Assembly: GCA_965240325.2 (NCBI GenBank)
Contig: OZ251229.1
Span: 1,116,001-1,180,000, forward strand
Length of the DNA stretch: 64,000 nucleotides
Source: Rebecca billardiae RCC1528
Lineage: Eukaryota; Protista; Haptophyta
Direction: 5' to 3'
The notes below the pieces were generated by a model. That model was not told where the DNA came from, made no database searches, and worked only from the letters and a program-made list of their open reading frames with translations. A program made the translations under genes and the position numbers. Of this stretch, positions 12,350-33,200 are shown piece after piece; the first letter of the stretch is position 1; each line of letters starts with the position of its first letter.

Positions 12350-12613
12350 CGTCGCTGGCGCGCTAAGCGATCGTCGTGGCCCGCGTGGCGTCGTCCGATG
12401 AGGCGATGAAGAGATGCGTGTTCAACACGCCGGTAGGCCGGTTGCCGCTTCCGGGGGGGGGCTAACGGGCTTCGACCGAGCTCGCCCGGCACCGGACTTC
12501 TGACGAAATCGGCGTGTCTTGCTCAGGGCGTGGCCGACGACGCCATTGTCACCCGCCGATCGCCTTCGGCGCGGCGCATGACGTCGTCAAGGCGTCATGG
12601 GCCCGGGGCGGCC

Positions 12614-13858
12614 ATGCCGGCGCAGTGGCGAGTCGCCGTGCTCGTCGCCGGCGCCGCTCTGCTCGCTCCAAGCCCGCTGGGGGCGCAGCCCATCGCACCA
12701 TCCTTCGCTGCGCCGGCCCGCGCGGCAAACGCCAGCGCGCCGGCGTGCCGCGTCGTTGCCTTCCTGCACGTGCCCAAGTGCGCGGGCAGCAGCGTGCGCT
12801 ACATGTTCAAGCGGGGCTCGCCGGGGACGTGGCGCTGCCCGAACATCTGCACGCAGCTGAGCAGCGTGTGCAAGGCGTGGGGCTGCGACAAGACCGAGCC
12901 GCTGCCCGAGTCGCACGTGCAGCGGTGGCGGAAGCGAGGCCTCCCGCCGCTCGACGCGCGCACCGAGCCGCTCTGGTTCTTCGAGCGGCACTGCGGGCCG
13001 AACCTCGAGCGCTTCGCGCGTTGGCTGCCCAAGCTGCGCCGGCACGCCGAGTCGCGCGGCTGCCGCTTCGCCGCGCTCACCCTCCTCCGAGATCCGATCT
13101 CGATGCTTCTCTCGGACTTCTCCTTCTTCGGCGACTACTCGGACCGGGCCAACCTCAGCCTGAGCCAGTGGGCGCGCTCGCACCCGGAGCTGCTGCTGCT
13201 CGACGAGGACCAGCACCTGGACACGCAGCGGGTGGTGCCCGCGCTCGAGCGCGCGCGGCAGGGCAAGTACGCCCCCTCCGTCCCCGAGCCCGCCGTGCGC
13301 CACCTCGAGGCGCTGCGGCGCGCGTACGCGGACGCGCAGCTCGCGTTCGTGCGGCACATGCCGACGCTCACGGCGGAGCTGCGCGCGGAGGGCGGCGCGC
13401 GCAGGGCGGCGTGGATGGCGCGCAGCGCGCGGCTGCAGCAGGCCTCGCTCGCGGCGCGCGCGCGCTGGCTGCAGGCGCTCCGCGCGGCGGGCGTGCTCAG
13501 CTGCGAGCGCCTCCTCGCCGCCGTCGAGCCGCTCCTGTCCCTCTTCGACGTCGTGGGCGTGGTCGATCGGTTCGCAGAGTCGATGCTGCTCACGACCGAG
13601 GCGCTCGGCATGCGCGGGGTGCCCACGCTGCGCTTCAGTAACAGCAGGCGGAGGGCGGGCGACGCGGCGGGGCGCGCGCGGCCGAACGCCGTCGAGCTCG
13701 ACGAGATGCTGCCCGGCCTGCGCGCGCTCAACAACTGCTCGATACAGCTCGTCGATCGCGCGCGTGCGCGGCTGGATGCGCGCGTGGCGCGGCGCGGAGA
13801 CGCCTTCCACGCTCGACTCGCGCGCGCGCGCGAAAAGATGCGCCCACCGGATCGCTGA
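12614..13858 (+). CDS. Secreted/Golgi sulfotransferase-like protein
   Basis: Signal peptide MPAQWRVAVLVAGAALLA, 5'-PSB motif FLHVPKCAGSS, 3'-PB motif LLRDPISMLLS and C-terminal VGVVDRFAES. Confidence 0.82.
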   Translation: MPAQWRVAVLVAGAALLAPSPLGAQPIAPSFAAPARAANASAPACRVVAFLHVPKCAGSSVRYMFKRGSPGTWRCPNICTQLSSVCKAWGCDKTEPLPESHVQRWRKRGLPPLDARTEPLWFFERHCGPNLERFARWLPKLRRHAESRGCRFAALTLLRDPISMLLSDFSFFGDYSDRANLSLSQWARSHPELLLLDEDQHLDTQRVVPALERARQGKYAPSVPEPAVRHLEALRRAYADAQLAFVRHMPTLTAELRAEGGARRAAWMARSARLQQASLAARARWLQALRAAGVLSCERLLAAVEPLLSLFDVVGVVDRFAESMLLTTEALGMRGVPTLRFSNSRRRAGDAAGRARPNAVELDEMLPGLRALNNCSIQLVDRARARLDARVARRGDAFHARLARAREKMRPPDR

Positions 13859-14107: not shown

Positions 14108-15712
14108 TCAGTCAACGGCCGCGTCGCGCGCGAGCCTGAAGCCGGCGTGCTGGTAGAAGTGCGGCCTGAAGAAGTTGCGCGCGCGCACGCACGCGTACGC
14201 CCCGCTCGACGCGAAGCTGCCCCCGGCGACGACAAAGTGCGCGCCGTCGAACGCGGGCGCCGAGAAGTCCGGGTAGAGGGGATGCGGGCAGAAGCCGTCG
14301 AGCGGCGCGACCGCGTCCGCGCACAGCTCCCACACGTTGCCCATCAGGTCGTGGTGCCCGCTCGGCGAGGGCGGCATGGCGTGCACCGGGCTCTCGGTGC
14401 CCCAGCGCAGGCCGATGTTCGCGCCGTCGGCGGTAGCCGCGGCGGGCGCTGCGTCGACGGCGAGCGTGCGCAGCAGCGTGTGCTCCGCCTCGCGCAGCGG
14501 CCGGTACGGCGCGCGCGCGCACCCCTCCGCCTGCGTGCGCCACGCGCAGTACGCGAGCGCCTCGTGCAGGTTCACCACCGCCGGCCAGTCCCACGGCATG
14601 GGGTGCACGCTGAAGGTCGAGCGGAGGAAGCGCGGCGCGTCGGCGGGCGCGCCCTCCGGCGCGCGCTCCCAGAACCGCGGCTCCGTCGCGCCGCAGCCGC
14701 GCCGCCACGCCCAGCCCTCGTCCGACCACAGCTCCCGCCGGCCGTACCCGCCTGCGGCCACAAACTGACGAAACGCGCCGTTGCTCACGAGCGTCGACGC
14801 GGCCTCGAACGGCGGGACGCGCACGCGGCGCGAGCCGAACTCGAGGTCCCAGCCGTACGCGCGCCCCGCGCCCGCGCCCGTCGCGGGGCCGCGGCCGAGC
14901 TGCACCTCGCCGCCCCCGTGCGGCACGAGGGCAGAGGCGGGGGGGTACTCGCGCCCGGCGGCAGGCGCGCCGACGCCCGTGGCGCGCGCGGCCGACGGGT
15001 GGTCGGCCGGCCAGCGTGCGGGCCTCTGCAGGCTCGCGAGGTCCATCTCGCGGAAGAGGACCGACGAGGTCTCGATGTGCACGCGCTGGTGCTCCACGCC
15101 CATGAGCAACGCCCACAGCGGGTGCTCCGCCGTCACGCGCGCGGGCCCGGCGCCGCCGCCGAGCTCGGGCTGTCGTTCCGCCGCCTCCCACACGCGCGCG
15201 CGCACGCGCTGCCGGAACGCGCGCACGTCGGCGATCGCGGGCCACTCGCGCTCGTTCAGGCTCATGTCATCCGCTGGCATCTCGTCCACGCCGACCTCGA
15301 AGAGCTGCTCAAAGTGCGGCTGCTCGCGCTCGTCCTCGCCCAGCAGGCCTGCTGCCACGAGCTTGTTCACGTAGAACGCGGCGGCGTGGCCGTAGTAGAA
15401 GACCTGGGGGCGGCGCAGGTTGTGCCATGGCGGCTCGAGGAACGCCTCCTCGCCGTTGAGCCCGCTGAACAGGGCGTCGTCCAGCCGCCAGGCGTCGTCG
15501 ATGTACGCGCGCACGCGCTCGCGCGTCAATCCGTGCGCGTCGAGGGCTGCCATGGCGGGCGTCGTGGCCGGCAGCGGCGGGGCCGTGAGCCACGACGCGT
15601 CGTCGCGCTGGCCGGAGAGCCACGCCTCACCGCGCAGGTTGGCTCGCCACGCGGCCCCCGCGCCGGGCGCCGCGCCCGGCATCGTGGCGAGGGCGCGGGC
15701 GAGTCGCGACAT
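14108..15712 (-). CDS. OvoA-clade non-heme iron sulfoxide synthase (DinB-like + FGE-like domains), no C-terminal methyltransferase domain
   Basis: LRRPQVFYYGH..FYVNKL, FEVGVDEM, metal motif MGVEHQRVHIETSSVL, YGWDLEFG, VSNGAF, PWDWPAVVN, GNVWE, HPLYPDFS, GGSF and HFYQHAGFR followed almost immediately by a stop. Intronless, 534 aa. Confidence 0.92.
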   Translation of the reverse strand: MSRLARALATMPGAAPGAGAAWRANLRGEAWLSGQRDDASWLTAPPLPATTPAMAALDAHGLTRERVRAYIDDAWRLDDALFSGLNGEEAFLEPPWHNLRRPQVFYYGHAAAFYVNKLVAAGLLGEDEREQPHFEQLFEVGVDEMPADDMSLNEREWPAIADVRAFRQRVRARVWEAAERQPELGGGAGPARVTAEHPLWALLMGVEHQRVHIETSSVLFREMDLASLQRPARWPADHPSAARATGVGAPAAGREYPPASALVPHGGGEVQLGRGPATGAGAGRAYGWDLEFGSRRVRVPPFEAASTLVSNGAFRQFVAAGGYGRRELWSDEGWAWRRGCGATEPRFWERAPEGAPADAPRFLRSTFSVHPMPWDWPAVVNLHEALAYCAWRTQAEGCARAPYRPLREAEHTLLRTLAVDAAPAAATADGANIGLRWGTESPVHAMPPSPSGHHDLMGNVWELCADAVAPLDGFCPHPLYPDFSAPAFDGAHFVVAGGSFASSGAYACVRARNFFRPHFYQHAGFRLARDAAVD

Positions 15713-15976
15713 GGCCGGGTTCCCGAGGCCTCACCGAGGAGACACCCGTTCGAGGGGAGCCACCGGACTGAGCGGATTTTCGCTGCTGGTTCGGCGGCGA
15801 ATAAACTCGCGATGACGAGTCGTGCCTATTCAGAATCAAGTATTCATCCGTCCGGTACGGTAGTTGCACGGATCTATCCGGCGCGACGTGAATACGGTAC
15901 GTGATGACGAGAATCCTCGACGTTGGCCGTCAGCCGGCGTCGCCCAGGCCGCGTCGACCGGCAGGTGGTAGGCCAA
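15713..15976. promoter_or_regulatory. Probable bidirectional promoter between the sulfoxide synthase and the EgtD-like gene
   Basis: 264-bp lower-GC spacer between two divergent ATGs. Confidence 0.55.
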
Positions 15977-17110
15977 ATGGCGCGAGCACTGTCAGTCCTT
16001 CGGCGAGCCAGAGCCGGCGGGTTCGGCGCACCGCTCGCGCGAGCGCTGCGCACCACTCCGAAGACTCGATCGGAAGCGCTCGCCCCCGAGCCGCTGGGCG
16101 ACGACCCCGAGGCTGACGAGCGCGCCGACATCCTCGCGGCGCTGAGCGCACCGACGCCGTCCATCAGCTGCGTGTACCTGTACGACGCGCACGGCTCCGC
16201 GCTGTTCGAGCAGATCTGCGCGACCGAGGAGTACTACCTCACGCGCACCGAGGACGCGCTGCTCAAGGCCATCACCCCCGAGCTCATCCGCTTTGCCGAC
16301 GAGCCACGCGACGCCACGTCGCTGAGCGGCACATGCATGGTCGAGTGCTCGGCGGGCAACGGGCAGAAGGTGGCGCCGGTGGTGCTCGCGTCCTCCGCGA
16401 TCAGGCCGACGACGTACGTCCCGATGGACGTCTCCGCCTCCGCCCTCGACGCCAACGCCGCGCGCCTCGCGCCCCACATCGGCGCGCGCGCCCTGCAGTT
16501 TGAGCCGCTGGTCGGCACGAACGAGGATGGGCTGCGGACCGCGGCGCAACTGGACGGGCGCAAGTGCTACATGCTGCTCGGCTCGAGCCTGGGCAACGCA
16601 ACCGAGCCGCACGAGGAGCTCCGGATGGTCGCGGAGCACATGCGCCCCGCGGACCGCCTCGTCGTCGGCATCGACACGCCGCCGAGCGCGCCCGGCTCTG
16701 GCGGCAAGACGGAGGCGGCCGTGGTCGCCGCGTACAATGACGCGGCGGGGATCACCTCGGCGTTCACGCTGAACGCGCTGACGCACCTCAACCGGATCGC
16801 CGGCACCGACTTCGACCTCGCCGACTTCCGCCACGTCTCCGAGTGGTGCCCGGAGCGCAGCGCGATCCTAGCCTACGTCGAGGCCGCGCGCGACGTGACG
16901 GTGCACGCGCGGCCGAGCGCAGACGCGGCCGCGACGAGGGTGCTCTCGCTGCGGGCGGGCGAGCGGATCTTCATGGAGCAGTCGGCCAAGTTCGGGCTGG
17001 AGCACATGCGCCAGATCGGTGGGCGCGCGGGCCTGCGCCCCGTGCGCCACTGGCTGAGCGAGCGCGACTACTACCTCATCATCGAGTACGCGCTCGCAGG
17101 CTCCAGCTGA
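15977..17110 (+). CDS. EgtD-family (Methyltransf_33) SAM-dependent amino-acid N-alpha-methyltransferase
   Basis: YLYDAHGSALFEQI...EYYLTRTE, YVPMDVSASAL, LGSSLGN, AYNDAAGITSAF, DFDLADFRHV and GERIFMEQSAKF are colinear with EgtD. Intronless. Confidence 0.92.
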   Translation: MARALSVLRRARAGGFGAPLARALRTTPKTRSEALAPEPLGDDPEADERADILAALSAPTPSISCVYLYDAHGSALFEQICATEEYYLTRTEDALLKAITPELIRFADEPRDATSLSGTCMVECSAGNGQKVAPVVLASSAIRPTTYVPMDVSASALDANAARLAPHIGARALQFEPLVGTNEDGLRTAAQLDGRKCYMLLGSSLGNATEPHEELRMVAEHMRPADRLVVGIDTPPSAPGSGGKTEAAVVAAYNDAAGITSAFTLNALTHLNRIAGTDFDLADFRHVSEWCPERSAILAYVEAARDVTVHARPSADAAATRVLSLRAGERIFMEQSAKFGLEHMRQIGGRAGLRPVRHWLSERDYYLIIEYALAGSS

Positions 17111-17573: not shown

Positions 17574-18486
17574 ATGGCTGCCCAGCCTGGCCCTGCGCGC
17601 ATTCCGCCGCTGAACTTTGCGCTGGTCTCGCCCGGTGTGTACCGCTCGGGCTTCCCCACGCAGCGCAACATCGAATTTCTTCGGCATCTTGGCCTGCGCA
17701 CAGTCGTCCGCCTGAGCAAGGAGAAGTACTCCCCGGATGTTCTCGCCTTTTTTGAGGCGTCTGGCACCCTGGTGGTCGATTGCGCGACCAAGGGAAACCT
17801 TGTGCGTGCGCATGCGCATCTATCTGCTCACCGCACGCGCCCTTTGCACGAGCCTCACCGACGCGCGCATACATCCACCGCGTGCCCGTGCGCGGCAGGA
17901 GCCCTTCACGCTCATCAAGCCGAAGGTGCTGAGGCGCGTGCTCACGGCGATGTGCATCCCGGACTTCCACCCGGTGCTGGTGCATTGCATCAACGGGCAG
18001 CAGACGACGGGGTGCGTGGTGGGATGCCTCCGCAAGGCGCAGGGATGGGCGCTCTCTGCCGTCTTCGAGGAGTACAGGCGGCACATCTCCGGCTCCAAGG
18101 TGCGCGCGCTTGACCTGCAGGTGATTGAGCTGTGCGACGAGCAGCCGGACGCGGAGCTGCTGGCGGCGGATGCGCTGGACGGCGGGGGGAAGGAGGCGCG
18201 CAAGAAGGCCAAGGGGGCAGCGGGTGGCGGCAAAACTGGCGCCGGCGGAGACGGAGACCCCGAGGCGCCCGCGGCAGACCGTCCCCGCGAACAGATGAGC
18301 GCGCCAGCAGTAGCCCAAGCTGGCGGCGAAGAGCGCGCTGCGCCTGTCGCCGTGCCTGCGGCTAGCCTGCCGGCCAGTCCGATCAAGACTGGCAGCCCGA
18401 CGCTCGGCCAGCCCTTGCTCTCATCGGCGGCAACGTCGCCGCTCAGCGTGACCAGATCACGGTCGATGCCGGCGCCGGACAATTAA
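17574..18486 (+). CDS. SIW14/OCA-family (Y_phosphatase2) protein, probably a pseudophosphatase; intron 17802-17898
   Basis: PPLNFALVSPGVYRSGFP, HPVLVHC and TGCVVGCLRKAQGWALSAVFEEYRR. The GT..AG intron joins the two ORFs in frame. Confidence 0.9.
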
Positions 18487-20099
18487 GTAATAAGTAGTCG
18501 CGCAGTATGCGCATTATATTATTATATAATAGGAGTCGACCGAAGTCGGACGCCAGTCCGGTGTCCGTGACGACTCACAGTCGGAGTCAGTGACAGTAGT
18601 CACATGCTGGTCGTGCCTTGTGCCCGTGGCCGACCGCTGTGAGGCTGACTTCGCTGCGGCCCGTGAGCCAACCTGAGAGTGACTACACTCGGCGGACTTC
18701 GCCTTCCGCGCCGCTTCTCGGACACAGTCACATAGCACTCCCGCGCCTCAAGTTGAAGAGTGCCGCCGCCGTGGCTCGGCCTCGGTGGCCCGCGGCCTGT
18801 GGGTCCGGATAGTGGAATAGCGACCGAGCGCCCAACACTCAACAGGCAACACCGCAGGCTGCGCAGGTGATTCGGAGTGAGCAAGCGGGCGGGCGGCGCG
18901 GGCGTCGCGTGCGAACTACGTGCAGGTGCGCTCGGCGAGAGCCTTCCCAGCGGCAGGGTGGGGCTGACCGCCACCCACGCTCTCCGTCGGCCCAGGGTCG
19001 CCGGGCCGCCGCGGCGCGTCAAGTCGCCGATGGTCGGGCAGTACGGCGCGGCGCCACTGCTCAAGCCAACACGCGCAGCCCAGCCGGGTAGGGGGGGGGA
19101 GCGTAGCACGCAACGCTTCGCACTCGCAGTGCGGAATGGGGCTGACCGCCAACCACGCTCTCCCTCAGGCTCAGACCCGCGCCTGCGCGGGTGGCGCCGC
19201 CGACTTACTGGCACCTGCCACTCGAAGTCCTGACACGCGCACGGGCCGAGGGCGCAGGCGGCAGGACGCGCCTTGCCCGACGGAGCCCGCGCCACGGCCG
19301 CAGCTGACTGGCTGACTGCGTGAGCAAGCGGGAGGCGGGTCCGGAGGCACGTGCAGGCGTGCTCGGGGAGAGCGTGGGCGGCTCGCGCCCGTCCACCGGT
19401 AGTTGTCGATAACGACTATATATATTGCGGACGTGCCCGCCTTTTCGGCTTTTCGGCACGAATAATAATCAATGATCGATGTCTAAACAAGGAGGTAGCA
19501 GGTTTCAAAAATCGAAACTCGGTCTGCACCAGCCCAGAGCCCTTGAAAATCGTCCCCGACCCCGTGGCCCTGCGCGTTCCGCCCTGCACCGCGGGCCATG
19601 ATTCACCGGCGACACAGACCAGTACGACGATGGATGGGTGGCGGTGGTGATGCGCGCGCGCGCGGTGCATCTTGGCCTGCCTGCGCGATCGAGCGCGTGC
19701 TGGGCCAGATGGGCCTGCCGCGGCCCACCAGCGGTGGAACGCCTCGCGCGAGCGCAAGACGCGCTCGGCGGTACCGTCGCTCGAGCCGCTGCGGCCCTCC
19801 TCCGCCTCCGAGCCCTCGCCGCCCGGCGCGGGGAGCAGCCCGACGCGGCCGAGCGTCGGCAGCGTCGCGGCGGCGCGCACCGGCGTGCGCGCGGGCGGCA
19901 GCGCGTGCGCCGACTCGGGCGTGCCGCGCGCGGCGGGGCGGCGCGGCGGCGGCGAGGCGCCGACAGCGAGCGGCCGGCCGTCCGGCCGCGAGCCGTCGTC
20001 GTACAGCGCGCGCAGCGTGCCGAACGCCGAGCCGTGGTACGAGATCGCCGAGAAGGCCTGCAGCGCCATCTCCTCGGCTCGCGGCGGGCGCACGCCGCT

Positions 20100-20833
20100 T
20101 CGCCCACGCACGCACGCCGCCACCCGTCCGCGGGCTGAGGCGCCGGCCGCTTGCGCGGCGCGCCGTCGCCCGGCTCGACGCTCCGCACCACCGCCGCGCG
20201 CGCGTGCTCGTCGGGGAGCAGCTTGTCCAGCTCGGGCGCCAGAGCGCGCACGTCCACCCCGACCGCGCGCAGCATGCGCTCGACGGCTGCGCGCACGCGC
20301 GTCGGCTCGAGGCGCTCGATCGTCTTGGACGCGCCGAGGGTGGCGTTGAGCCCACCGCAGTGCTCAGACTGCCGCAGCCAGTGCCGGTTGCGCACGCGCC
20401 CTCGCCCGAGCGCTGCCGCCGCCTCGTCGAAGCTGGGGCGCGCGACGCCGAATGCTGCCTCCGAGCAATGGCGTGCGCCGTCCATGTCACGGCCCACGGT
20501 GCACTTGGACGCGTACGCCGAGGCGAAGCGCTCGAGCGGCTCTCTGTAGAAGACGGCGGCGTGCCACGTCGGGTCGGCCAGCCGCGCCGCGGCGTCCTCC
20601 ACGCCCAGCCCGAAGTAGCGCAGCGTGTTGGTGTTCTGCACGAACCCTGCTTGAGCAGCGCCGGGTCGTGCGGCGTGCTGACCGCGCGGAAGAGCTGCAG
20701 GAAGCTCTGGCTCGCGACCTTGTCGACCTTGCAGAAGAGGATGAGCCGGTACTCCGGCACGAGGATGAAGGAGCTGTACGAAACGAACGCGGCTCAGCGC
20801 CACCGCCGCCGTCGCGTTGCTCGCGCCCGCCAT
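20100..20833 (-). pseudogene. Carbohydrate sulfotransferase (Sulfotransfer_2-like) with frameshifts
   Basis: FCKVDKVASQS lies in one frame, while REPLERFASAY and RHWLRQSEHC lie in another. Frame changes occur at about 20790 and 20645. The 3' end is uncertain. Confidence 0.7.
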
Positions 20834-21010
20834 TGTGCGCGCGGCAACATCGCGGCAGGCATACAATTCCGCTCCGACGAAGCTGAGTAGCTGAGCACCC
20901 CTCGAATCTGGATCGCGGTCGGGCGGACGCGTGCACGTGTGCAGTAGCAAGGGTGGTCGCAGTAGCAAGCCCTGTACAGCTCGTCTCCACGCGCGCCCGC
21001 CAGGGTTAGG

Positions 21011-21636
21011 CTGCCGGGCGACGCGCGCGCCAGCCGGTGCGCTGCGCACAAGCTGGTCGGCATGGTCGACCTGAAGAGCCGCAAGTGTGATCACACCGGC
21101 TGCACCAAGCATCCTTGCTTCGGCATGCCGGGCGACGCGCGCGCCAGCCGGTGCGCTGCGCACAAGCTGGCCGGCATGGTCGACGTGAGGAGCCCCAAGT
21201 GTGATCACACCAGCTGCACCACGCGGCCTTCGTTCGGCATGCCGGGCGACGCGCGCGCCAGCCGGTGCGCTACGCACAAGCTGGCCGGCATGGTCGACGT
21301 GAGGAGCCCCGAGTGTGATCACGTGGACTGCACCAAGCAGCCTTTGTTCGGCATGCCGGGCGACGCGCGCGCCAGCCGGTGCGCTGCGCACAAGTTGGCC
21401 GGCATGGTCGACGTGAGGAGCCCCAAGTGTGATCACACCAGCTGCACCACGCGGCCTTCGTTCGGCATGCCGGGCGACGCGCGCGCCAGCCGGTGCGCTA
21501 CGCACAAGCTGGCCGGCATGGTCGACGTGAGGAGCCCCAAGTGTGATCACACCAGCTGCACCACGCGGCCTTCGTTCCGCATGCCGGGCGACGCGCGCGC
21601 CAGCCGGTGCGCTACGCACAAGCTGGTCGGCATGGT
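21011..21636 (+). repeat. 114-bp coding tandem repeat, about 5.5 copies
   Basis: ATGGTCGAC recurs at 21062, 21176, 21290, 21404 and 21518. Confidence 0.95.
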
Positions 21637-21937
21637 TAACAGGCGGCTCGCCCTGCCCAAGCGCAGGCTGGAGCATGGCACCGGCGACCCGGGCACGCTT
21701 GCAGCGAAGCGACAGCACACGCACACCAGCCGCATTGCCACGAACTCGCATGCCGCCATGCAGCTGCCCCAAGCGCCGCCGCTGGTCGGGAGACTCGAGA
21801 GAGGCAACGGGGCGGATTGCCGAATGCCGCCAGACGGTGTCGGTGATGGCACAGACACCGTCACCGACGATGAGGAGTCGTCTGACCATTGGACGGTGAT
21901 GGCATCCGATCTGATGTCATCGTCCTCCGAAGAGTGA
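21062..21937 (+). CDS. EsV-1-7 cysteine-rich repeat protein
   Basis: Five-plus 38-aa repeats of MVDVRSPKCDHTSCTTRPSFGMPGDARASRCAxHKLAG (C-x4-C...C-x2-H). A likely splice acceptor at 21003 suggests an upstream exon. Confidence 0.85.
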   Translation: MVDLKSRKCDHTGCTKHPCFGMPGDARASRCAAHKLAGMVDVRSPKCDHTSCTTRPSFGMPGDARASRCATHKLAGMVDVRSPECDHVDCTKQPLFGMPGDARASRCAAHKLAGMVDVRSPKCDHTSCTTRPSFGMPGDARASRCATHKLAGMVDVRSPKCDHTSCTTRPSFRMPGDARASRCATHKLVGMVNRRLALPKRRLEHGTGDPGTLAAKRQHTHTSRIATNSHAAMQLPQAPPLVGRLERGNGADCRMPPDGVGDGTDTVTDDEESSDHWTVMASDLMSSSSEE

Positions 21938-24253: not shown

Positions 24254-27200
24254 ATGACGGAGTGGGGAGGCCCTGCCTACCCATCCGTTCTCCTCCCCGA
24301 GCCGAGCGCTCCACCAGCCTCGCTTGCCACCGCGCAGAGTGCATCACCAATGCGCACGCGGCCGACGCGATTCGACGACCTCGACATTGACAAGATCCCA
24401 CCGCCCACGGACGGCACGGGGCAAGGTCAGCGGCGCCACGGCGTACGGTCTGACCCTCAACATGCTCCCTCCAACGTGCTGCCGCGCTCCAACGTGCAGG
24501 CGGCGCAAGTGACAGCCAGCCGGACATCCTCGGCCAGGCCCATCGCCAGCGCGCTCGCCGAGTCCTCCGGGTGCAGGCTCAGCCTGCTGAGCCTGCGTGC
24601 CCACAACACCGCCCGATGGGGCAAAACCACCTCGGCCCACACAGGCCTAAAACGTGCAGCCCCCACCGGCTTACTAGGTGTGACACCCGACTGCCATGCC
24701 CCTGGGGCTGGGACAGCGCAGCTACTACTGCGACACCCGCACCGTGGATATGGCCTGGATGACCGCTGCTTGCTGCCAGCGAGCAAGCAGACACTGGCTG
24801 ATGAGCTGCCGTGCACAGGCTACGTCGTAGGCGATGCCCGGGGGCAGACAGTGGCGCTGGTTCAGGACGGGCCCTCGGTCCCGCCGTGCCCAGCCTGGCC
24901 GGCTGCCTGCGGAGCCTTTCAGTTTCGCAGCCCTGCTGACACCGGCCGGGCTAGACTCATCCTCGGTGCTGAGAGCTGGCCAGGCGACGAAAATGACGGT
25001 TGGAGGCTGGTGAAAGCCCGACATTCGTCCCGACGGCGAGGGCGACGCCGGCGTGCAACGATACCTAAGGGGGGTAAAGCAGCGCCCCAGGGTGATGACT
25101 ATCACGCCTGGTGGGGAGCCCATAACATTAACGAAGCACCCGTGGCGCCGCCTGGCGCCGCGGGTATGGCCCGGCAAGTAATTGTGATGAATGCGCCTTC
25201 AAGTATGAGTACCGGAGGGAGATACCATTGCCTCGCGACTGATGACAGTGCGGACGATGATGCCACACCTCAGACAGACCCGCCACATACTCCGTTGCTG
25301 GGTAAACGGCGCCGCGGCGCGCGCGCGCAGCGGGCCGGTGCTGGTGCTCGGGCCAAGACGCCTGGCGCGGGGGCGCAGGCATCGGCCGAGCCGGGCTTGC
25401 CGAACGCGCACGTGCGCTGCGCCAAAGGCAACGCCGTCGCTACTCTCCCCGATGACAGGATGCGAAGGGCGGCAGCGGCGATGGCCGAGGACACGGGCCG
25501 CATGCTGCCGCACGACATGGCCTCCACGGCCACCGTGCTCGCTGGCGACCAGGCGGCGGAGAAGGTAAATGCCGAGGTGGGCACTTCGTCTCGCCCCGTC
25601 GCTTTCGACCACGCTGCCCGGATCGTATGGCTGGCCCACGCTGTGGTGGCAGCACTGCTGGTGTTGATGCAGATCACACGGATGCCGGCTGCTGGCTGCT
25701 TGACTGAGCTGGGCCTGGCCTCCCTGCCCCCCCCAGTGTGGCCGACGTTCGTCACCGTCGTCGTGCGAGCACAGCCAGCACTGGCCGTGCTCTCAGCAGG
25801 AATAATGGCTGAGGTGCTTGCCTGGCTACTGCTGTTGGCACTACGCAGTCGCCTCACTCTGCCCCCCGCCACAGCAGCGGTCGTCTGTGATGATGTTTGC
25901 TGTGACATGAAGCAGTCTGCCGTGCCGCGCAGCACTGGCACTGCGTGCGGTCGGGATGAGGCAGCGACAGTGCCAGCCTGCCGCAACTACTGGTCGGAGG
26001 TGGCCCGGCGTGCACGGGGTGAGTCTCCCTGCCCAGGTTGGCGACAGGCACGCAGAGCCCACCCGCGCGAGCTGATGCTGGTGCATGGCACAACATGGGT
26101 CGGCCTGCCCAGGAGCAGAGCATGTAAGCGCACTCGCAGGCGCAGGTGCTTGGCCTTGCCCCAGCCCCAGTGGCAGTGGGGCAGGGCGCCCCAGTGGCAC
26201 CACTGCCGCCAACAGGGGCAGTGCAATGGCAGGACAGCTGCCGGGCAGCGTGCCTGCAGAGGTGCTGCCTCGGCCAAGCGCAGGCGTCAGCAAGCGCCAC
26301 ATAAGCAGGCTGTCTTGTTTCTGATTACCATGCTCATGCATGTCCCCCCCAAGCACAAGTGGCACCTGCGTGTGAAGCACTGCCATGACACAGCAGGGCA
26401 TAGTGGAGGGGCAGCAGGCAGGGCTGGGCCTCAGTGCTGCGAACCTACCCGAGCAGAGGATGCAACGTCCAAGCACAAGTGGCACCTGCGTGTGAAGCAC
26501 TGCCATGACACAGCAGGGCATAGTGGAGGGGCAGCAGGCAGGGCTGGGCCTCAGTGCTGCGAACCTACCCGAGCAGAGGATGCAACGTCCAACCAGCGTG
26601 TCGGCGACCCTGACGATGGCCAGCGCCAAGGCGAGGCCAAGAACCCAGGCCCTGGTGCAGGCAGGCAGCGCCTCTCCATTGCGTCCGTCAACGTGGGGGG
26701 CATTGCCAAGCTATCCAGGAGGGCCATGCTCCAGACCCTGCTGGACGACCACCAGTGGGACATAGTAATGCTACAGGAGACAAACCTGCGGCAGGCCCTG
26801 GCCACACCAGACATTCTACAGGGGTACACCACATACCACGACCCCCTCCCTGCTCACCATAAGAGCTCGGGCAAAGGGGTAGCCATTGCTGTCCGCAGGG
26901 ACCCTGCAAGGCCCATGGCTGAGCTGGACATCAGAGTGCAGGGGGGTGCCATGCACAAGTCAGTGGCAGGCCACCTCCTGATGGGCACCCTGATATTCGC
27001 CACGGCAGCAGGGGATGTCTACCACATCCAACTCACATGCTTCTATATCCCATGCAACCCAGCCATGCGCAGCGCGGTGCTCCCTGCCCTGCACCACACC
27101 CTGGAAATGCATTCGGACATGGTCACTGGGCGCACAGATGCCCTACGGATGGCAGCAGGCGATGCAAACGCCGTCTGGGAGCAGGGGGAGGCTGTGGCCT

Positions 27201-30200
27201 TGGACCCTCGCAGGAGGCATCAGAACAAGTCGCAGTGCGCGTTCCGGAATCTGATGGAGTCATTGACTGGCATGCACAACATGAAGCCGCCAGGCACCTT
27301 TGACCCTGCTACTGAGTACACCCACGTGTGTGGCAATACCGCCTCACGCATCTCGTACATGCTCTCGAACAGAGCTGACCTGGCCTGCCACGTCAGGCAC
27401 AGTGACCCTGCTGCAGCGCTCGGCATCCCTCTCCAGACCACCGGCGAGGGTAGGAGCACCCATTTCTTCATGATCGCCGACATACCTGTCAGCAAGCTAG
27501 GCCACATACGACGGCCGAAAGTGCACGTGCGTTGGCAGCCCCACCGCTTCTACTTCAGCGCATCGGACCCACAGCATAGGGCCAAGGTGGTACAGGCCCT
27601 CCGCGGCCCCGCTGCTCAAACCCTGGCCAGAATAGCGGATGACAGTGGCACCATGCACCCTCTGTACAATGACAACAACCTCATTGACTTCCACGAGCAC
27701 ATGGACGCTGCAGCACGCACAGCGGCAGAGGAGGCCCTCCCTGACACGCTGGCAGAGCTTACCAGCCTCGCTGTGGACGGAGTGGGGGCTGCTGACCCAG
27801 CACAGGCCCCCAAAGAGCCGCTGCGCCCAGTGGGCGGGCCCCAGAACCGGGCAGTGGACCCCCGGGCACAGTCCCACCTGACCATGCACAGAGTGTATAG
27901 GGGAATGGTGGCCACCGTCACTCGCATCCTGCAGCTGCGCAGGGCCCACCGGCGCACGGAGTGCCTCGAAGGCCTCACCACAGCCGCACAGAGGGGGAAG
28001 ATGATCCGCTCGCTGGCCATGCCGAACAGCAGGAGGGCAGTCCGTGCCCATGAGCACATATGGGGAGCGCGCGCCGCTCATCCCATGGCACAGCGAAACA
28101 TGGGGGTGCCCCTGCCGGGTGGGGGCACTGCCCCGCCAGGCCAGGCCAGTGTCCCCACCCTGTACGCGCTGTGGCAGCTGAGCCAGCGCGAGATCGCAGT
28201 GTGGCTCGCCGACCTCAAGCAGATATGTACAACTTGCCTCATGGCCTTTGAGCGTGTCCAGCACAGATTTGAGACCGCTCGAATCAAGGAACGCTATGCC
28301 AAGCTCACCCGTGAGATGCACCGGAAAGGTACCCACCACTTGCGGAAGGAGCTCCTGCCCAGGGATAGGCCATCTGGCTTCGAGCTCACCCTCCTCCGCA
28401 CCACCGACCCCACCACTGGCCAAGCAGGTGTCACTGACGACCCTGCACGGATAAAGGAGCTAGCTGCAGCCTACACTGCCTCGAACATCGGCCAGCCGGC
28501 GGAACGCACCCCAGGGCCCCACCCTTATGAGGACGAAGCCATATGGAGGCCGATCAGGGACAGGTGGACCCCCGAGCTAGTAAGGGCAGTCACTGCGCCC
28601 ATGCGCGCCGAGGACCTCAAGCGTATACTGGGCAGGGCCAAGTCCAACGGGGCCCCAGGGCTCGATAAGGTGCAAATTTGCAGCCTCAAACTGGTCCTGG
28701 AGGCACAGCCTGCGCTGAAGACGGTGCTGATCAACTGCATCAACACAATCCTGCACTCCACCTCTCCTCTCCCTGCGCACATCACCCAGTCAGAGATTGT
28801 GAACTTCTACAAGAAGGGCGACGCCCTCGCCCTCAGCAATTACCGGGGAATCGCGCTGCAGAGCGTGATATACAAGATGGCCGCGGCCCACCGGGCCAGC
28901 CAGATACAGCACGTCTGCGACAGGCTGGGGCTGCTCCGACCAGAGCAGGCCGCGTCGCGCGCGGGCGGGCAAGGCGACTTGCATGTGGCTGCGCTCACTG
29001 CAGCCATCGCACATGCCAAGCGGCACAACCGCGAGCTGCACATCACAGCGTGCGACATCGCCAAGGCATACGACAGCGTGCCCATCTCGTCCCTCAGGCA
29101 GGCCCTGGCCCTCCATGGATTCCCGCCTCAGCTCGTCGCCAGCCTCGATCGGCTGGACGAGGGGTCCACAGCTGTCACTAGAACCCCACATGGTCTTACT
29201 GACCCGGTGCCCATCCGGAGGGGATGCAAGCAGGGCTGCCCGCTGAGCCCCATCAAGTTCTGCCTGTTCATGAACATGTTCATCCAGTGGTTCACGGCCA
29301 CGTCCGCCACCGGGTACACTTTCCAGCTAGATGCCACTGCCCGCCTCCCGCAGAGAGGCCCCCCAACAGCCCGCATCCAAGTGCAGGGGTACATGGATGA
29401 CTTGGCCCTGGTGGCCGCCACTGCGGCGGAGAACACTGCCCAGCTCGAGGCCCTCCATAAGTTCCTCGCTGCGCATGGCATGGTTCTCAATCACGCCAAG
29501 TGTGTGCACGCGTACAGGCCGGCGCGCACCCCGCGCGGCGGGCGAGCGTGCCAGCCGGCCGGCCCAGCCGCCCCGCTGTTCCCCCGGGCCGGCCAGGCGG
29601 TGGCCACCGTCCCCACCCTGGACCCGGCGCACCGCGAGTCGTTTGCGTACCTCGGATACCACCTCAACATGGAGTTGGCCTGGGGCGCGCACTCTCGGAA
29701 AGTGGCTGAGCGCCTCCAGAAAGCTGCGTGGCGCGTGGGGGTGGCGGCCATGGACCCCTGTTGCCATACTGTGATGACAGGGACCCTCCTCCAGCACGAT
29801 GTGGTGTCCACACTGGACTACAAGCTCAGTGCCAGCAAGCTCACCAAAGACGAGCTGCGCGGCATGCGCACCACGATCCTGCGCCCTGTGTGGCAGCGTG
29901 TTGGGCTGCCGCACGCGTCCGCGCGCATCGCCGCGTGCGGCCCCGCCAAGACGTGGGGCATTGGCCCCGAGGATCCCCAGGCCAGAGATGCTGGGCAGAA
30001 GGTGACCACTCTGCTGAAGGCTGCGAACTCGCTGGCGGCAGATGGCCACCTGACCCGGAGCGCCCTCTGCGAGTGGCACGCCTGCCTGCACTCGCCTGGG
30101 TTTGCCCCTGCGGCGTACCCCCCGTTCGTCGAGGGTGGGCTGCGCGCGCTGAACACCTGCCCGGCCGGTGCGGCGCGGTGGGCGCCGGCCACCTACCGTG

Positions 30201-33200
30201 AACTCGCGCTCCTCACTCTCAGGGAGGTGTGCGGCTCGCGTGTCGAGCACATCATGGATACGTACTCCAATAGGCTGTCTCGGCGGAAGCGCAGCAGCCG
30301 GACTGCCAGGCTCAACGCCATCCTCGACATGACTGTGGGTGCCACGATCGAGATGGCAGTGCCCAGGGCTGGCCCCAACCTGCCGGGCCGTGCCCACACG
30401 AGCATGCTGGAGGAGAGCATCCTGCGTGATGGTGGGACCTCCGCCGCGCAGATGATACGCGCCACCAATGGGGGAGCCGCAGCAGCTGTCCTCTCCCTTT
30501 TCACAGCGGACGGCAGGAGGGCCCTCCGTGCATACGACCCCGCGCAGGAGTGGATGTGCGGTCGCCTGGCCCATGCCTTGCTGGATGGGCTCGTTGACAA
30601 CTGGCTCACCGCCCCGGAAAACTTTCTGCTCACCGGGCACCTGGGCCCTGCGGACCGGGCTGCGGCCCACGAACTCGAAATCCCTACTGATGGCAGGCTG
30701 CCGGTGCGCGGCCTGCTGGCTGACACAGACAGGCTGATGGCCGGAGTGGATGGCTCCTACGTCCCAGGCAGGGGCCAGGGGGCAGCTGCTGTGGCATATG
30801 CGCTACCCCTCACACCGGGCGGCGAGCGCCATGCCATCACCATCTTCACAGCCACGTACCCCGGCGAGCAGTCAGCCCAGAACTCTGAGATTGCCGCTGC
30901 CACCCTGGGAGTGAAGGTGCTCTCTACTATTGGAGTGCGGCACGCCCACATAGGGTGGGACTGCGATACTGCCCTGCACCACACCCTCCGCGCCCGGCCG
31001 GACTTGACAGCCCCGGGAGAGTCTGTTCCCCGCCAGGGCACTGGCACCGCAGCCAAACTCCTCTCTGGCAGCCCCCACATGGTGCGCCTCCTCCGGCTCC
31101 TGGACATCTGCGTCCCACCGGCGTCGGGTCACCAGTGGGCGTTTCGCCACCAACAGGCAGGCCATGTGGAACTGGACCGCCTGGTTGGCAACACCCTGGC
31201 CCCACTGTGGTCGGCCCTCGACAACGCCTTCTGCGTGAGCTCGGCCCAATGTGAAGCGCTGCTGCGCATAGTGCTCGGACATGCCCCTGGCACCCCACGC
31301 GAAGCTGCGCTCCGTACGGTCTGCAACCTGTGTGCGGATTGGGCCAGCAAGCAGGTCGCCAGGGGTGACCGGCAGGCATCGTTCGCACTGGGGCCGATGG
31401 TCTGGCTGCCGTACAGAGTGTCACTGATGGAGCACGGCTCTGCCACGTTGCTACCGTCCTGCCCAAACCAGGTCCGCACCCGCGTCATGGACAGGGCGCG
31501 CAGGGCTGCGCTGGAGGCACATGCTGCCACGCCTGCTGCAGCAGCGAAGTACAGGCTCAAACTGGCTGGACCCGACAGTGACCAGGAACCCGACCACCAG
31601 GGCGGTACCCCGCTCCCATGCGATGTCAGCGAGTCCACACACTCGCTTCAGAACCAGTGGTGCCGCGAGCGCATCAGTAAGTTTGTGCTGCGCTGCGCGG
31701 TCGGTGCACTGGTTTACAATGCGGATGCTGTGGCAGCCACACCGGCCCTGGCTGGTGTCCGGCGACGGTGCACCAGCTCGCGGGCGACCTATGCCCTGGG
31801 CACAGAGTGCCTATTCTGCCTGAAGGCGGGGGACCCGAACCCAGGGCCGGATAGCGTGCACCACGTCTTCCATCAGTGCCAGCACGCACACGCGCAGCGG
31901 AACGCTGAGGACAGGGTGGGAGCTGCGATACGTAAGGCCTCGAATGGCGCCATCCCACAGCCCGAAGCCACCCGACTCGCGGTCCAGGCGACGCTTCACC
32001 CCTTCTACTATGCTGGCAAGGTGACCGAGGCCACTGTCACAGCTGTGAAGCAAGCACTGGCTGCCCACCAGCCGCCTGGCGGCCAGCCGGTGCCGTACTC
32101 CGCGGGGATGATCCACAAGCCCTTGGCCCTGGCCGCCAGCAAAATCCACGACGAGCGCAGGGCGCTGAGCCTCAGCTCGGCGTATGCCAAGACGTACGAC
32201 TTGGATAAGTACTGGGCCCTCCTCCATAAGCAAGGCCGGGCGGCTGCCAGCCAGGCGGAGCCCGCCCCTGCTGCTGAGGTGGCAGAGCCAGGCCCACCTG
32301 CTGAAGACTCGCCAGCCCCCGATGAGCTGCTGCAACAGCAGCCGGCCGCAGCTGCCCCACCGGCTGCAGATGCCCCCGCCAGCGATGCGCAGGCGCCCGC
32401 TGCGTTGGGGCCTGGCCTTGCTCCAGCAGCGGCGAGCCACCCCCTGCCTGCACAGCTGCTGGGCCCGGTGCCGGAGGGCGCCGCAGCTGGGCCGCCAGCG
32501 GCAGCGCACGCTGGCCTGGCTGGCGCGGCGATGCACGGCGCACAGCGTGGCAGCAGGCGGCGGCCCCGCTCGCCCGATGCAGACGCCCTGGCACACCAGG
32601 ATGATAGCGGTGCGAGTGGGCCCCCTGCCCAGCAGCGGCGGTTGGCAGCAGCGGCAGGCTCCACCCCTCGCACTGCGGGCCCCCCAATCGACGATGTGGC
32701 TGCAGGCCACTCTCAACACCCTGCACACCGGCGGCCCTCAGTGCGGCTGCCACCTATGCCTGCCTACGTTGCTGTCCAGCCACAGTGGCGCGGGGCGGCC
32801 ACTGAGCTGCTGGCAGCAGTGGGGCATGCTGTGTACCCTACTTGCATGCATGGGGACTGCCTCCTGCTGGCAGCCATGGGCTATGTCGAGGAGCGTGCCG
32901 CCGCAGTGGGCCCCTGCACCGCCGCCTACCAGGCAGTCCGCTTCCTCAGGGCAGCTGCTGTGGACTGGGTGCTCGGCACAGCACACCTCTCACGGACACA
33001 CCGGCTTCAATTGGGGCTCGTGGACGCGGATGGACTGGAGGCCATCAGCATGTCTGACAGCTATAGGGCCACATACCATGGGCAGGGTGCCCAGCCAACC
33101 CTGCACGAGTTCGCCGGGCCGCTCAGGGCTGCAGCGAGCTACGGGGCCGATGGCAGGCTCGCCGCCGGTGGGGCGTCGAGGTACTGGCCCACTGTCATGA

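What the first reader, a model, noticed from the sequence alone, without database searches (positions are those of the whole stretch)
14108..17110. Head-to-head OvoA-type sulfoxide synthase and EgtD-type methyltransferase: candidate eukaryotic two-gene thiohistidine cassette
Seen: two intronless genes diverge from a 264-bp spacer. One has OvoA-clade signatures (FYYGH, GVDEM, EHQRVHIETSSVL, HPLYxDFS, HFYQHAGFR) but stops right after the FGE domain. The other is colinear with EgtD. Known: canonical OvoA (ovothiol) carries its own C-terminal imidazole N-methyltransferase, EgtD belongs to ergothioneine synthesis, and short OvoA-like enzymes working with EgtD have been reported in cyanobacteria as a convergent ergothioneine route. 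Inference: this is a clustered hybrid pathway in an alga, making either ergothioneine with an OvoA-derived enzyme or an N-alpha-methylated 5-thiohistidine. Caveats: head-to-head pairs are common in this window, so the argument rests on the chemical relatedness of the two enzymes, and no C-S lyase is encoded here.
Basis: partly seen in the sequence, partly recalled or inferred. Interest (0 to 1): 0.92.

Follow-up and report, generated by a model that had tools for sequence, protein, structure and literature searches.

The report
Algal ergothioneine gene pair, OvoA-derived
Two back-to-back genes in a high-GC, haptophyte-like alga most likely make the antioxidant ergothioneine. One is a standard histidine methyltransferase, and the other is an ovothiol-type sulfur-inserting enzyme that has lost its own methyltransferase and changed its substrate pocket. 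No such pathway turned up for eukaryotic algae in the papers I could search.

Summary
Window 14108-15712(-) encodes a complete 534-aa OvoA-type sulfoxide synthase that stops right after the FGE-like domain. It lies head-to-head, across 264 bp, with a 377-aa EgtD-family methyltransferase at 15977-17110(+).

No OvoA-type methyltransferase exon exists anywhere in the 64 kb.

Where OvoA has (Y/F)-A-F in its histidine-binding motif, this synthase has N-F-F. That is the Asn plus bulky aromatic signature of hercynine-using enzymes (EgtB-II NFF, EgtB-IV NWF). The EgtD pocket is canonical apart from M252A.

The pair is also adjacent in a relative only about 50% identical (L011), although both flanks differ. 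In three further lineages the two genes occur in the same genome or sequencing run but are not adjacent. None of 160 canonical OvoA loci has an EgtD neighbour.

Trees place the seven-member MT-less clade inside eukaryote-type OvoA, apart from cyanobacterial EgtB-IV. The AU tests are only borderline (p 0.029 and 0.053), but a shared ~10-aa insertion and a shared N-terminal extension point the same way.

Best reading: a two-gene ergothioneine module with a probably independent, OvoA-derived EgtB-like enzyme. This is a new variant of a known kind. There is no biochemical or RNA evidence, because no sequencing runs were listed. The same scan had already flagged the RNFF motif on this window.

The parts
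14108..15712 (-). Non-haem-iron sulfoxide synthase, 534 aa. It has an OvoA-type scaffold (DinB-like plus FGE-like domains), no C-terminal methyltransferase, and is predicted to use hercynine plus cysteine (EgtB-IV-like).
   Evidence: TIGR04344 454.9 bits, Pfam FGE-sulfatase. Best solved relatives are EgtB-IV 8vig (296 bits), EgtB-IV 8vih (270.0) and OvoA 8khq (269.7). It sits in a seven-member clade without MT with 100/96 support.
14168..14179 (-). Substrate-pocket motif R512-N513-F514-F515, at the position of OvoA R-Y-A-F and EgtB-IV R-N-W-F.
   Evidence: Translation gives RNFF. Composite motifs come from Kayrouz et al. (PMC11030361).
14273..14275 (-). Catalytic tyrosine Y480, equivalent to Y406 of OvoA_Th2.
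   Evidence: PLYPDF. The column is invariant in A1. The role is taken from PMC10696552.
15077..15091 (-). Iron ligands H208 and H212 (HQRVH), equivalent to H162/H166 of OvoA_Th2.
   Evidence: invariant columns; roles.
15386..15400 (-). FYYGH: iron ligand H109 and cysteine-binding Y106. R100 lies just upstream.
   Evidence: invariant columns; roles.
15713..15976 (.). 264-bp divergent spacer (62% GC), presumed to be a shared bidirectional promoter region.
   Evidence: Coordinates, composition. Promoter function is an inference and was not tested.
15977..17110 (+). EgtD-family L-histidine N-alpha-methyltransferase, 377 aa. The open frame begins at TTG 15923.
   Evidence: Methyltransf_33 239.7 bits. 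MsEgtD 4pim 114.8 bits. Y39, F47, Y56, G161, N166, Y206, T213, E282 and S284 are all conserved and M252 is Ala. Residue roles are from PMC8593015.

Best explanation
The two genes form a eukaryotic ergothioneine module. [quoted passage not shown] The divergently transcribed OvoA-derived iron enzyme joins cysteine to C2 of hercynine using O2, giving hercynylcysteine sulfoxide. An unlinked PLP-dependent C-S lyase then releases ergothioneine. The synthase probably arose from a eukaryote-type, methyltransferase-bearing OvoA. It lost the N-pi methyltransferase domain and replaced the small His/Ala pocket residue with Asn plus an aromatic. This parallels cyanobacterial EgtB-IV but is probably independent of it. 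What is shown: the gene structures, motifs, phylogenetic position, synteny and co-occurrence. What is inferred: substrates, regiochemistry, the product, shared regulation and the direction of evolution.
For: (1) The catalytic machinery is intact: R100, Y106, H109, H208, H212 and Y480 are invariant (roles).
(2) The pocket motif is N-F-F, and N-Y-F or T-Y-F in the six clade mates. OvoA has (Y/F)-A-F, EgtB-IV has N-W-F and EgtB-II has N-F-F. In the published work, Ala versus a bulky aromatic separates histidine users from hercynine users, and mutating OvsA to Y-N-F switched it to hercynine and C2 (PMC11030361).
(3) An aromatic at that position goes with absence of the MT domain in 16 of 18 sequences, against 13 of 160 for the rest.
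(4) No MT exon exists in the window.
(5) The EgtD pocket is fully conserved apart from M252A.
(6) The same head-to-head pair occurs in L011, where the proteins are 50% and 52% identical to the window's and both flanks differ.
(7) The two genes occur in the same sequencing runs or genome in three more lineages: SRR30872635, the SRR2934033x runs and Pavlovales sp. CCMP2436. The two gene trees are congruent.
(8) None of 80 metagenomic and none of 80 bacterial canonical OvoA loci has EgtD in its flanks.
(9) The precedent is cyanobacterial OvoA-like EgtB-IV clustered with EgtD (PMC8433421; PMC11030361). Plain OvoA already sulfurises hercynine at C2 (PMC10696552).
(10) On origin: the clade lies inside the OvoA crown (87/98), with the xHF eukaryote-type OvoAs of dinoflagellates, oomycetes and ochrophytes. 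It shares their ~10-aa insertion (median spacing 63 and 62, against 51-53 elsewhere) and their long N-terminus. An AU test rejects union with canonical EgtB-IV (p 0.029).
Against: There is no enzymology, no metabolite data and no RNA data; no sequencing runs were listed. Position 15 is Phe or Tyr rather than the Trp of EgtB-IV, and one clade member has Thr instead of Asn. AshA shows that an OvoA-branch enzyme can act at C2 of plain histidine, so motifs do not fully predict the substrate (PMC13674229). Adjacency is broken in the Diacronema/CCMP2436 group. B scores below the TIGR03438 equivalog cut-off (208.9 against 290.9). Independent origin is not secure. Placing the clade outside the OvoA crown costs 43 lnL units but gives p-AU of only 0.053. 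The groups tested were named after the tree had been seen. The clade's amino-acid composition is skewed by high GC. A language-model search ranks a cyanobacterial short cluster first. No lyase was found nearby, and the rest of the genome could not be searched.
Confidence: 0.55

Rival explanations
1. The function is the same (EgtD plus a hercynine-using synthase making ergothioneine), but the synthase is simply a eukaryotic orthologue of the known EgtB-IV family. It would have been inherited or transferred from cyanobacteria or other bacteria, not newly derived from eukaryote-type OvoA.
For: The best solved-structure match is EgtB-IV 8vig (296 bits against 270 for OvoA). It shares N at position 14, Pro after the motif and FYQHAGFR. 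It is short and paired with EgtD. The Atlas feature search ranks a cyanobacterial 467-aa cluster first. The AU test for a position outside the OvoA crown is not significant (p 0.053). In the careful tree the clade groups weakly with short bacterial N-type proteins (P0253, P0227, P0244, P0245).
Against: FastTree, quick and careful IQ-TREE runs all put canonical EgtB-IV (P0258, P0277) outside a 98*/87-98 OvoA clade that contains the window clade. AU p is 0.029 against union with them. Bit scores to eukaryote-type full-length OvoA are much higher (up to 455). The clade shares the insertion and N-terminal extension of xHF OvoA, both absent from EgtB-IV. It also lacks the EgtB-IV 'GVDP...EEL' form.
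Confidence: 0.18
2. The pair makes a different thiohistidine. In one version the synthase acts on free histidine at C5 and the EgtD homologue then N-alpha-methylates 5-thiohistidine, giving an ovothiol B/C-like compound without the ring methyl. In another it acts at C2 of histidine, as AshA does, and methylation follows sulfurisation.
For: The scaffold is OvoA and passes the ovoA_Nterm equivalog cut-off. No enzyme for N-alpha-methylation of ovothiols is known (PMC12631010 abstract). M252A enlarges the side-chain pocket of the methyltransferase, which could admit a thio-substituted imidazole. AshA shows C2 chemistry on histidine within the OvoA branch.
Against: The Ala that marks histidine users is replaced by a bulky aromatic, and Asn is present as in all hercynine users. 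M252 is Ala or Thr in 30 of 120 ordinary EgtD homologues, so the change is not diagnostic. Loss of the N-pi methyltransferase fits ergothioneine. OvoA enzymes given methylated histidines switch to C2.
Confidence: 0.12
3. The adjacency is a historical accident with no shared pathway, and each enzyme works alone. For example, B might make hercynine or another betaine while A makes a thiohistidine for some other product.
For: Head-to-head pairs are common in this compact genome. The pair is separated in the Diacronema/CCMP2436 group, where EgtD instead sits beside a conserved coiled-coil gene and the synthase sits between RPL22e and an S3_C gene. No expression data exist.
Against: Adjacency persists across about 50% protein divergence while both flanks changed. 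The two genes co-occur in every lineage where the synthase was found, and their trees are congruent. None of 160 canonical OvoA loci has an EgtD neighbour. The pocket change matches the product of the neighbouring enzyme.
Confidence: 0.08

Closest known systems
EgtB-IV (cyanobacterial OvoA-like ergothioneine sulfoxide synthase; Liao & Seebeck 2017; structures 8VIG/8VIH)
   Same: OvoA-type scaffold without the C-terminal methyltransferase. Conserved R-x-Y-H, D, H-x-H and Y core. Asn at motif position 14, an aromatic at 15 and Phe at 16. Encoded next to EgtD. Predicted to use cysteine, not gamma-glutamylcysteine.
   Different: Position 15 is Phe or Tyr, not Trp. The protein is eukaryotic, with a long N-terminal extension and a ~10-aa insertion typical of eukaryote-type OvoA. 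Trees place it apart from EgtB-IV (AU p 0.029). The genes are divergent and monocistronic rather than in an operon.
OvoA (5-histidylcysteine sulfoxide synthase, ovothiol A pathway)
   Same: It passes the ovoA_Nterm equivalog threshold and is 42-48% identical to eukaryotic OvoA. It has the same iron ligands, catalytic Tyr and cysteine-binding residues, and it nests within the OvoA crown in all trees.
   Different: It has no N-pi methyltransferase domain. The histidine-pocket residue (Ala in bacterial OvoA, His in eukaryote-type OvoA) is replaced by Phe, preceded by Asn. It is paired with EgtD, which was not seen for any of 160 canonical OvoA loci.
EgtD (mycobacterial histidine N-alpha-trimethyltransferase) and EgtD-EgtB clusters or fusions such as fungal Egt1
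   Same: Methyltransf_33 fold with all histidine-contacting residues conserved. Genetically linked to its sulfoxide synthase, as in 69.9% of bacterial NHISS neighbourhoods.
   Different: It scores below the bacterial equivalog cut-off. M252 is Ala. It has an Arg-rich N-terminal extension of about 45 residues, possibly a targeting peptide. Its partner is an OvoA-branch enzyme, not an EgtB-branch one.
AshA/TgiA (OvoA-branch enzymes making 2-thiohistidine for dipeptides; PMC13674229)
   Same: OvoA-branch enzymes whose pocket has been remodelled towards EgtB-like C2 chemistry.
   Different: AshA uses histidine, keeps a vestigial MT domain, has an H-F-Y pocket and is paired with ATP-grasp ligases rather than EgtD.

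Membership tests
OvoA (ovothiol synthase) | N-terminal sulfoxide-synthase domain above the curated TIGR04344 threshold | tested here: met
   454.9 bits against a cut-off of 400.
OvoA (ovothiol synthase) | Three-His iron site, catalytic Tyr, and Arg/Tyr cysteine-binding residues | tested here: met
   H109, H208, H212, Y480, R100 and Y106 are invariant in A1. Roles are from PMC10696552.
OvoA (ovothiol synthase) | C-terminal SAM-dependent N-pi methyltransferase domain | tested here: not met
   The ORF stops 6 residues after HAGFRLA. The MT HMM finds nothing in the 64 kb. All seven clade members lack the domain.
OvoA (ovothiol synthase) | Histidine-binding composite motif ...Y-F-(Y/F)-A-F | tested here: not met
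   The window has N-F-F at these positions. Motif definitions are from PMC11030361.
EgtB-IV | OvoA-like NHISS without an MT domain and with the R-x-Y-H / D / H-x-H / Y core | tested here: met
EgtB-IV | Hercynine-binding motif x-N-W-F | tested here: inconclusive
   N and the final F match. W is replaced by F, or by Y in relatives, and N-F-F is the EgtB-II form.
EgtB-IV | Encoded next to egtD | tested here: met
   Head-to-head with an EgtD homologue in the window and in L011.
EgtB-IV | Phylogenetic membership of the cyanobacterial EgtB-IV clade | tested here: not met
   It separates in three tree methods. AU p 0.029 against a joint clade. A more general position outside the OvoA crown is not rejected (p 0.053).
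EgtB-IV | Catalyses C2 sulfoxidation of hercynine with cysteine | not testable with these tools
   Needs an enzyme assay with NMR or MS.
EgtD | Methyltransf_33 fold over the full length | tested here: met
   PF10017 239.7 bits, profile positions 2-299 of 304. Matches PDB 4pim, 4uy5 and 7scf.
EgtD | Curated equivalog score (TIGR03438) | tested here: not met
   208.9 bits against a cut-off of 290.9. The model is built for prokaryotic annotation.
EgtD | Histidine-contacting residues Y39, F47, Y56, N166, Y206, T213, E282, S284 | tested here: met
   All are conserved in the window protein and in its 9 closest relatives. M252 is Ala.
EgtD | Trimethylates L-histidine to hercynine | not testable with these tools
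   Needs an enzyme assay.

The most novel reading that the evidence does not exclude
The pair does not make ergothioneine. Instead it makes a thiohistidine not yet described from any organism, such as an N-alpha-methylated 5-thiohistidine betaine (an ovothiol-like thiol without the ring methyl). In that case the EgtD homologue would be the first known N-alpha-methyltransferase acting on a thiohistidine.
Probability: 0.1. Interest if true: 0.85.

Novelty: new variant of a known kind. Interest (0 to 1): 0.62.

Why it matters
Reviews describe ergothioneine as a product of fungi, actinobacteria, cyanobacteria and a few other prokaryotes, which animals obtain through diet. A dedicated pathway in pavlovophyte-like haptophytes would add a eukaryotic phytoplankton source. 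These algae include strains used as aquaculture feed. It would also suggest where marine food webs get ergothioneine, and it would give a simple two-gene module for expression.

There is an evolutionary point as well. This would be a further case of the sulfoxide-synthase scaffold being retuned from ovothiol to ergothioneine chemistry. The route would again be loss of the methyltransferase domain plus an Asn/aromatic pocket change, as seen in cyanobacterial EgtB-IV. That makes the published composite-motif rule directly testable on a natural eukaryotic enzyme.

I found no report of an EgtB-IV-like enzyme in eukaryotes in the searchable library. That library is incomplete.

Tried and rejected
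- **RNA evidence.** Two searches for sequencing runs, one with the whole pair and one with gene A alone, listed none. Read laying was therefore not used, and co-expression and splicing could not be checked.
- **Early synteny look-ups.** The first look-ups (Diacronema, CCMP2436, a metagenome relative, P0002/P0003) showed other neighbours and briefly suggested a chance pair. L011 and the co-occurrence data reversed that view.
- **Wider locus scans.** A metagenome scan with the clade alignment and a bacterial genome scan with short N-type proteins returned only canonical MT-bearing OvoA loci. They served only as a negative baseline for EgtD adjacency.
- **Short bacterial relatives.** The loci of P0253/P0348 and of P0244 have no EgtD neighbour. 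This says nothing about a bacterial donor.
- **A flawed AU test.** I tested whether all 46 MT-bearing OvoAs form one clade (p 3.7e-5). I discount the result because it also forces other nested short or truncated sequences out of the clade. The targeted test gave p 0.053.
- **A failed regex.** A strict pattern for the N-terminal 'NLRGE..WL' motif performed poorly, so I cite only the extension length and the insertion.
- **The 'remodelled EgtD pocket' note.** The earlier scan note s1-360826 is not supported. Only M252A differs, and that position varies in ordinary EgtDs.
- **Not attempted.** I did not run a structure prediction, because the tool returns no coordinates for pocket geometry. The Ireland et al. 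2024 EgtB-IV structure paper was not held.
Full report
**Observation**

The window is 56-79% GC. At the stated place it carries two uninterrupted ORFs on opposite strands.
- A is 14108-15712(-), 534 aa.
- B is 15977-17110(+), 377 aa from the first ATG. The open frame starts at a TTG at 15923.
- The spacer between them is 264 bp.

A hits Pfam FGE-sulfatase. It also hits DinB_2, at 21.9 bits, below that family's 24.8-bit cut-off. It passes the NCBIfam equivalog-domain model for the OvoA N-terminal domain (454.9 bits, cut-off 400), while EgtB and SenA models score only 122-128 bits.

B is a full-length Methyltransf_33 protein (239.7 bits). It scores 208.9 bits on the EgtD equivalog model, below that model's cut-off of 290.9.

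**No hidden methyltransferase**

A stops six residues after HAGFRLA. The DNA downstream of it is occupied by a convergent 442-aa ORF with no family match.

I built an HMM from the C-terminal methyltransferase domains of eight full-length OvoAs. It finds nothing in any frame of the 64 kb, down to 25-aa ORFs (best E 0.2). The six closest relatives come from independent assemblies and end at the same point.

**What kind of sulfoxide synthase is A**

The best matches among solved structures are EgtB-IV 8vig (296 bits), EgtB-IV 8vih (270.0) and OvoA from Hydrogenimonas 8khq (269.7). The EgtB-I/II, SenA and OvsA hits all score 60 bits or less.

The iron ligands (H109, H208, H212), the catalytic Tyr (Y480) and the cysteine-binding Arg/Tyr (R100, Y106) are invariant. 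Their roles are taken from PMC10696552.

Kayrouz et al. (PMC11030361) compress this enzyme family into composite motifs:
- OvoA ends ...Y-F-(Y/F)-A-F.
- EgtB-IV ends ...Y-x-N-W-F.
- EgtB-II ends ...Y-N-F-F.

They show that the small Ala marks histidine users and that Asn plus a bulky aromatic marks hercynine users. Mutating OvsA to Y-N-F switched it to hercynine and to C2.

| Group | Residues at these positions |
|---|---|
| Window protein A | R-N-F-F (14168-14179) |
| Its six relatives | R-N-Y-F, or R-T-Y-F in one |
| Bacterial OvoA | R-Y-A-F |
| Eukaryote-type full-length OvoA | R-(F/Y)-H-F |
| Short EgtB-IV-like proteins | R-N-W-F or R-L-W-F |

Across 178 domains, an aromatic at this position goes with absence of the methyltransferase tail in 16 of 18 cases, against 13 of 160 otherwise. 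The earlier scan note s1-360765 had pointed at this motif, and I confirm it.

**The methyltransferase B**

I aligned B to M. smegmatis EgtD and to 119 homologues. Every residue that contacts histidine or its amino and carboxylate groups is conserved in B and in its nine nearest relatives. These residues are Y39, F47, Y56, G161, N166, Y206, T213, E282 and S284; their roles are from PMC8593015.

Only M252 differs. It is Ala here, and it is Ala or Thr in 30 of 120 homologues. The scan note s1-360826 ('remodelled pocket') is therefore not supported.

**Is the pairing meaningful**

The first look-ups argued against it:
- In Diacronema lutheri and a metagenomic relative, EgtD sits head-to-head with an unrelated protein that has no family match, and in Pavlovales sp. 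CCMP2436 no OvoA-like gene is called within 10 kb of it. A later comparison showed that this neighbour is conserved (54% identity) between the Diacronema contig and a further EgtD locus, L020.
- The closest relatives of A (P0002 and P0003, about 50% identical) sit between RPL22e and a Ribosomal_S3_C gene.

Three further results changed the picture:
- **A second adjacent pair.** Contig L011 (5.3 kb, 69% GC) carries P0083, which is 52% identical to B. It lies head-to-head with P0194, which is 50% identical to A. The called starts are 33 bp apart.
- **Different flanks.** L011 shares the downstream S3_C gene with L012 (54% identity) but shares nothing with the window except the pair. P0194 and P0083 are the deepest branches of their respective clades. 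The simplest history is an ancestral adjacent pair that was separated once, in the Diacronema/CCMP2436 group.
- **Co-occurrence.** P0082 and P0002 come from the same run (SRR30872635). P0079 and P0341 come from the same runs (SRR29340330 and SRR29340316). CCMP2436 has P0075 plus a fragment (KAJ1616530.1) belonging to the P0004 cluster.

As a baseline, none of 80 metagenomic OvoA loci and none of 80 bacterial species-representative OvoA loci has an EgtD gene in its flanks. All of these are canonical motif types, and nearly all carry the methyltransferase domain.

**Origin**

FastTree on 178 domains, quick IQ-TREE and careful IQ-TREE (LG+C20 PMSF, 71 rows) agree:
- The seven MT-less proteins form a clade with 100/96 support.
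- That clade lies inside the OvoA crown (87/98).
- Its neighbours there are the xHF OvoAs of dinoflagellates, dictyochophytes, oomycetes and a Chrysophaeum relative, plus a few bacteria.
- The canonical EgtB-IV representative (P0258, with P0277) lies outside.

| AU test | Lower lnL by | p-AU |
|---|---|---|
| Window clade forced together with P0258 and P0277 | 59.9 | 0.029 |
| Window clade forced outside the whole OvoA crown | 43.2 | 0.053 |

The groups were named after the tree was seen, the bootstrap had not converged, and these high-GC sequences are compositional outliers.

Rare characters give independent support:
- The clade shares a ~10-residue insertion between the H-x3-H-x-ETS and GWD-x-E motifs with xHF OvoA. 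Median spacing is 63 and 62, against 51-53 in bacterial OvoA, EgtB-IV and short bacterial N-type proteins.
- It also shares the long N-terminus, with about 115 and 136 residues before FYYGH, against about 60 elsewhere.

I put independent derivation from a methyltransferase-bearing eukaryote-type OvoA at roughly 0.7. A protein-language-model search nevertheless ranks a cyanobacterial short cluster first. That could reflect convergence or true kinship.

**Organism**

The source is not named. The named nearest relatives of both proteins are Pavlovales (Diacronema lutheri and Pavlovales sp. CCMP2436). Related contigs are 64-74% GC and carry RPL22e, ELMO, proteasome and BTB genes. The window also holds a LINE-like giant ORF, according to scan notes. 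A pavlovophyte-like haptophyte is the likely source.

**Mechanism proposed**

The steps are inferred, not shown:
1. B converts histidine to hercynine.
2. A couples cysteine to C2 of hercynine, giving the sulfoxide.
3. A lyase encoded elsewhere completes ergothioneine.

Cysteine, not gamma-glutamylcysteine, is predicted as the donor because the OvoA-type R/Y contacts are kept. An unlinked lyase is the norm: egtE is co-encoded in 6.2% and ovoB in 4.4% of neighbourhoods, and AshA also borrows a lyase (PMC13674229). Both proteins have N-terminal extensions, and B's is Arg-rich. This could mean organellar targeting, but I did not test that.

**Literature**

Cyanobacterial OvoA-like enzymes clustered with EgtD are known (PMC8433421; PMC11030361). 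MT-less OvoA-like proteins are noted in Bacteroidetes. OvoA homologues are reported in haptophytes in general (bioRxiv 2026.02.12.702910). I found no report of an EgtB-IV-like enzyme or an ergothioneine pathway in haptophytes or other eukaryotic algae.

**Verdict**

This is a real, conserved gene pair. It is most likely an ergothioneine module built on an OvoA-derived enzyme, and so a new variant of a known kind. Function and independent origin are well-supported predictions and have not been demonstrated.

Noticed in passing
window 21005-21636: A 114-bp tandem repeat, 5.6 copies at 92% identity. It lies inside the long ORF 19505-21889(-), where it encodes a repeated 38-aa unit.
   Followed up: no
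window 17574-18486: A Y_phosphatase2 (tyrosine phosphatase) gene downstream of the EgtD gene is split across two overlapping frames. 17574-18113 covers profile positions 2-60 and 17737-18486 covers positions 66-149. This suggests a short intron or a frameshift.
   Followed up: partly
window 12530-13858(+) and 19603-20760(-): Two ORFs without significant Pfam hits show faint sulfotransferase similarity (Gal-3-O_sulfotr E 0.11; Sulfotransfer_2 E 0.27). The first is the convergent neighbour of the synthase gene.
   Followed up: partly
L003:1349-3592(-) and L020:1-1350(-); the same position in L001 and L005 also holds a protein with no family match: In Diacronema-type genomes the EgtD gene is head-to-head with a conserved coiled-coil-like protein that has no Pfam family. 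It is 54% identical between the two lineages compared.
   Followed up: partly
L011:3928-4974(-) and L012:4008-4940(-): A gene with a Ribosomal_S3_C domain lies convergent and downstream of the MT-less synthase in two lineages (54% identity). This is a second conserved neighbour that the window lacks.
   Followed up: partly
P0005-P0030 and P0195-P0256 (eukaryote-type OvoA): Full-length OvoAs of dinoflagellates, oomycetes, ochrophytes and some Planctomycetota/Obscuribacterales carry His (R-F/Y-H-F) where bacterial OvoA has the 'diagnostic' Ala. In this set 69 of 75 proteins with His at that position have an MT tail. The published bacterial composite motif does not describe them.
   Followed up: partly
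Atlas structure search, row 8: A mostly chlorophyte cluster of about 932-aa proteins fuses an FGE-sulfatase/NHISS-like domain to glycosyltransferase domains. This recalls the SenA/SenB selenoneine genes.
   Followed up: no
window 24254-34339(+): A 3361-aa single ORF, flagged by the scan as a LINE-like retrotransposon, lies 7 kb from the pair.
   Followed up: no
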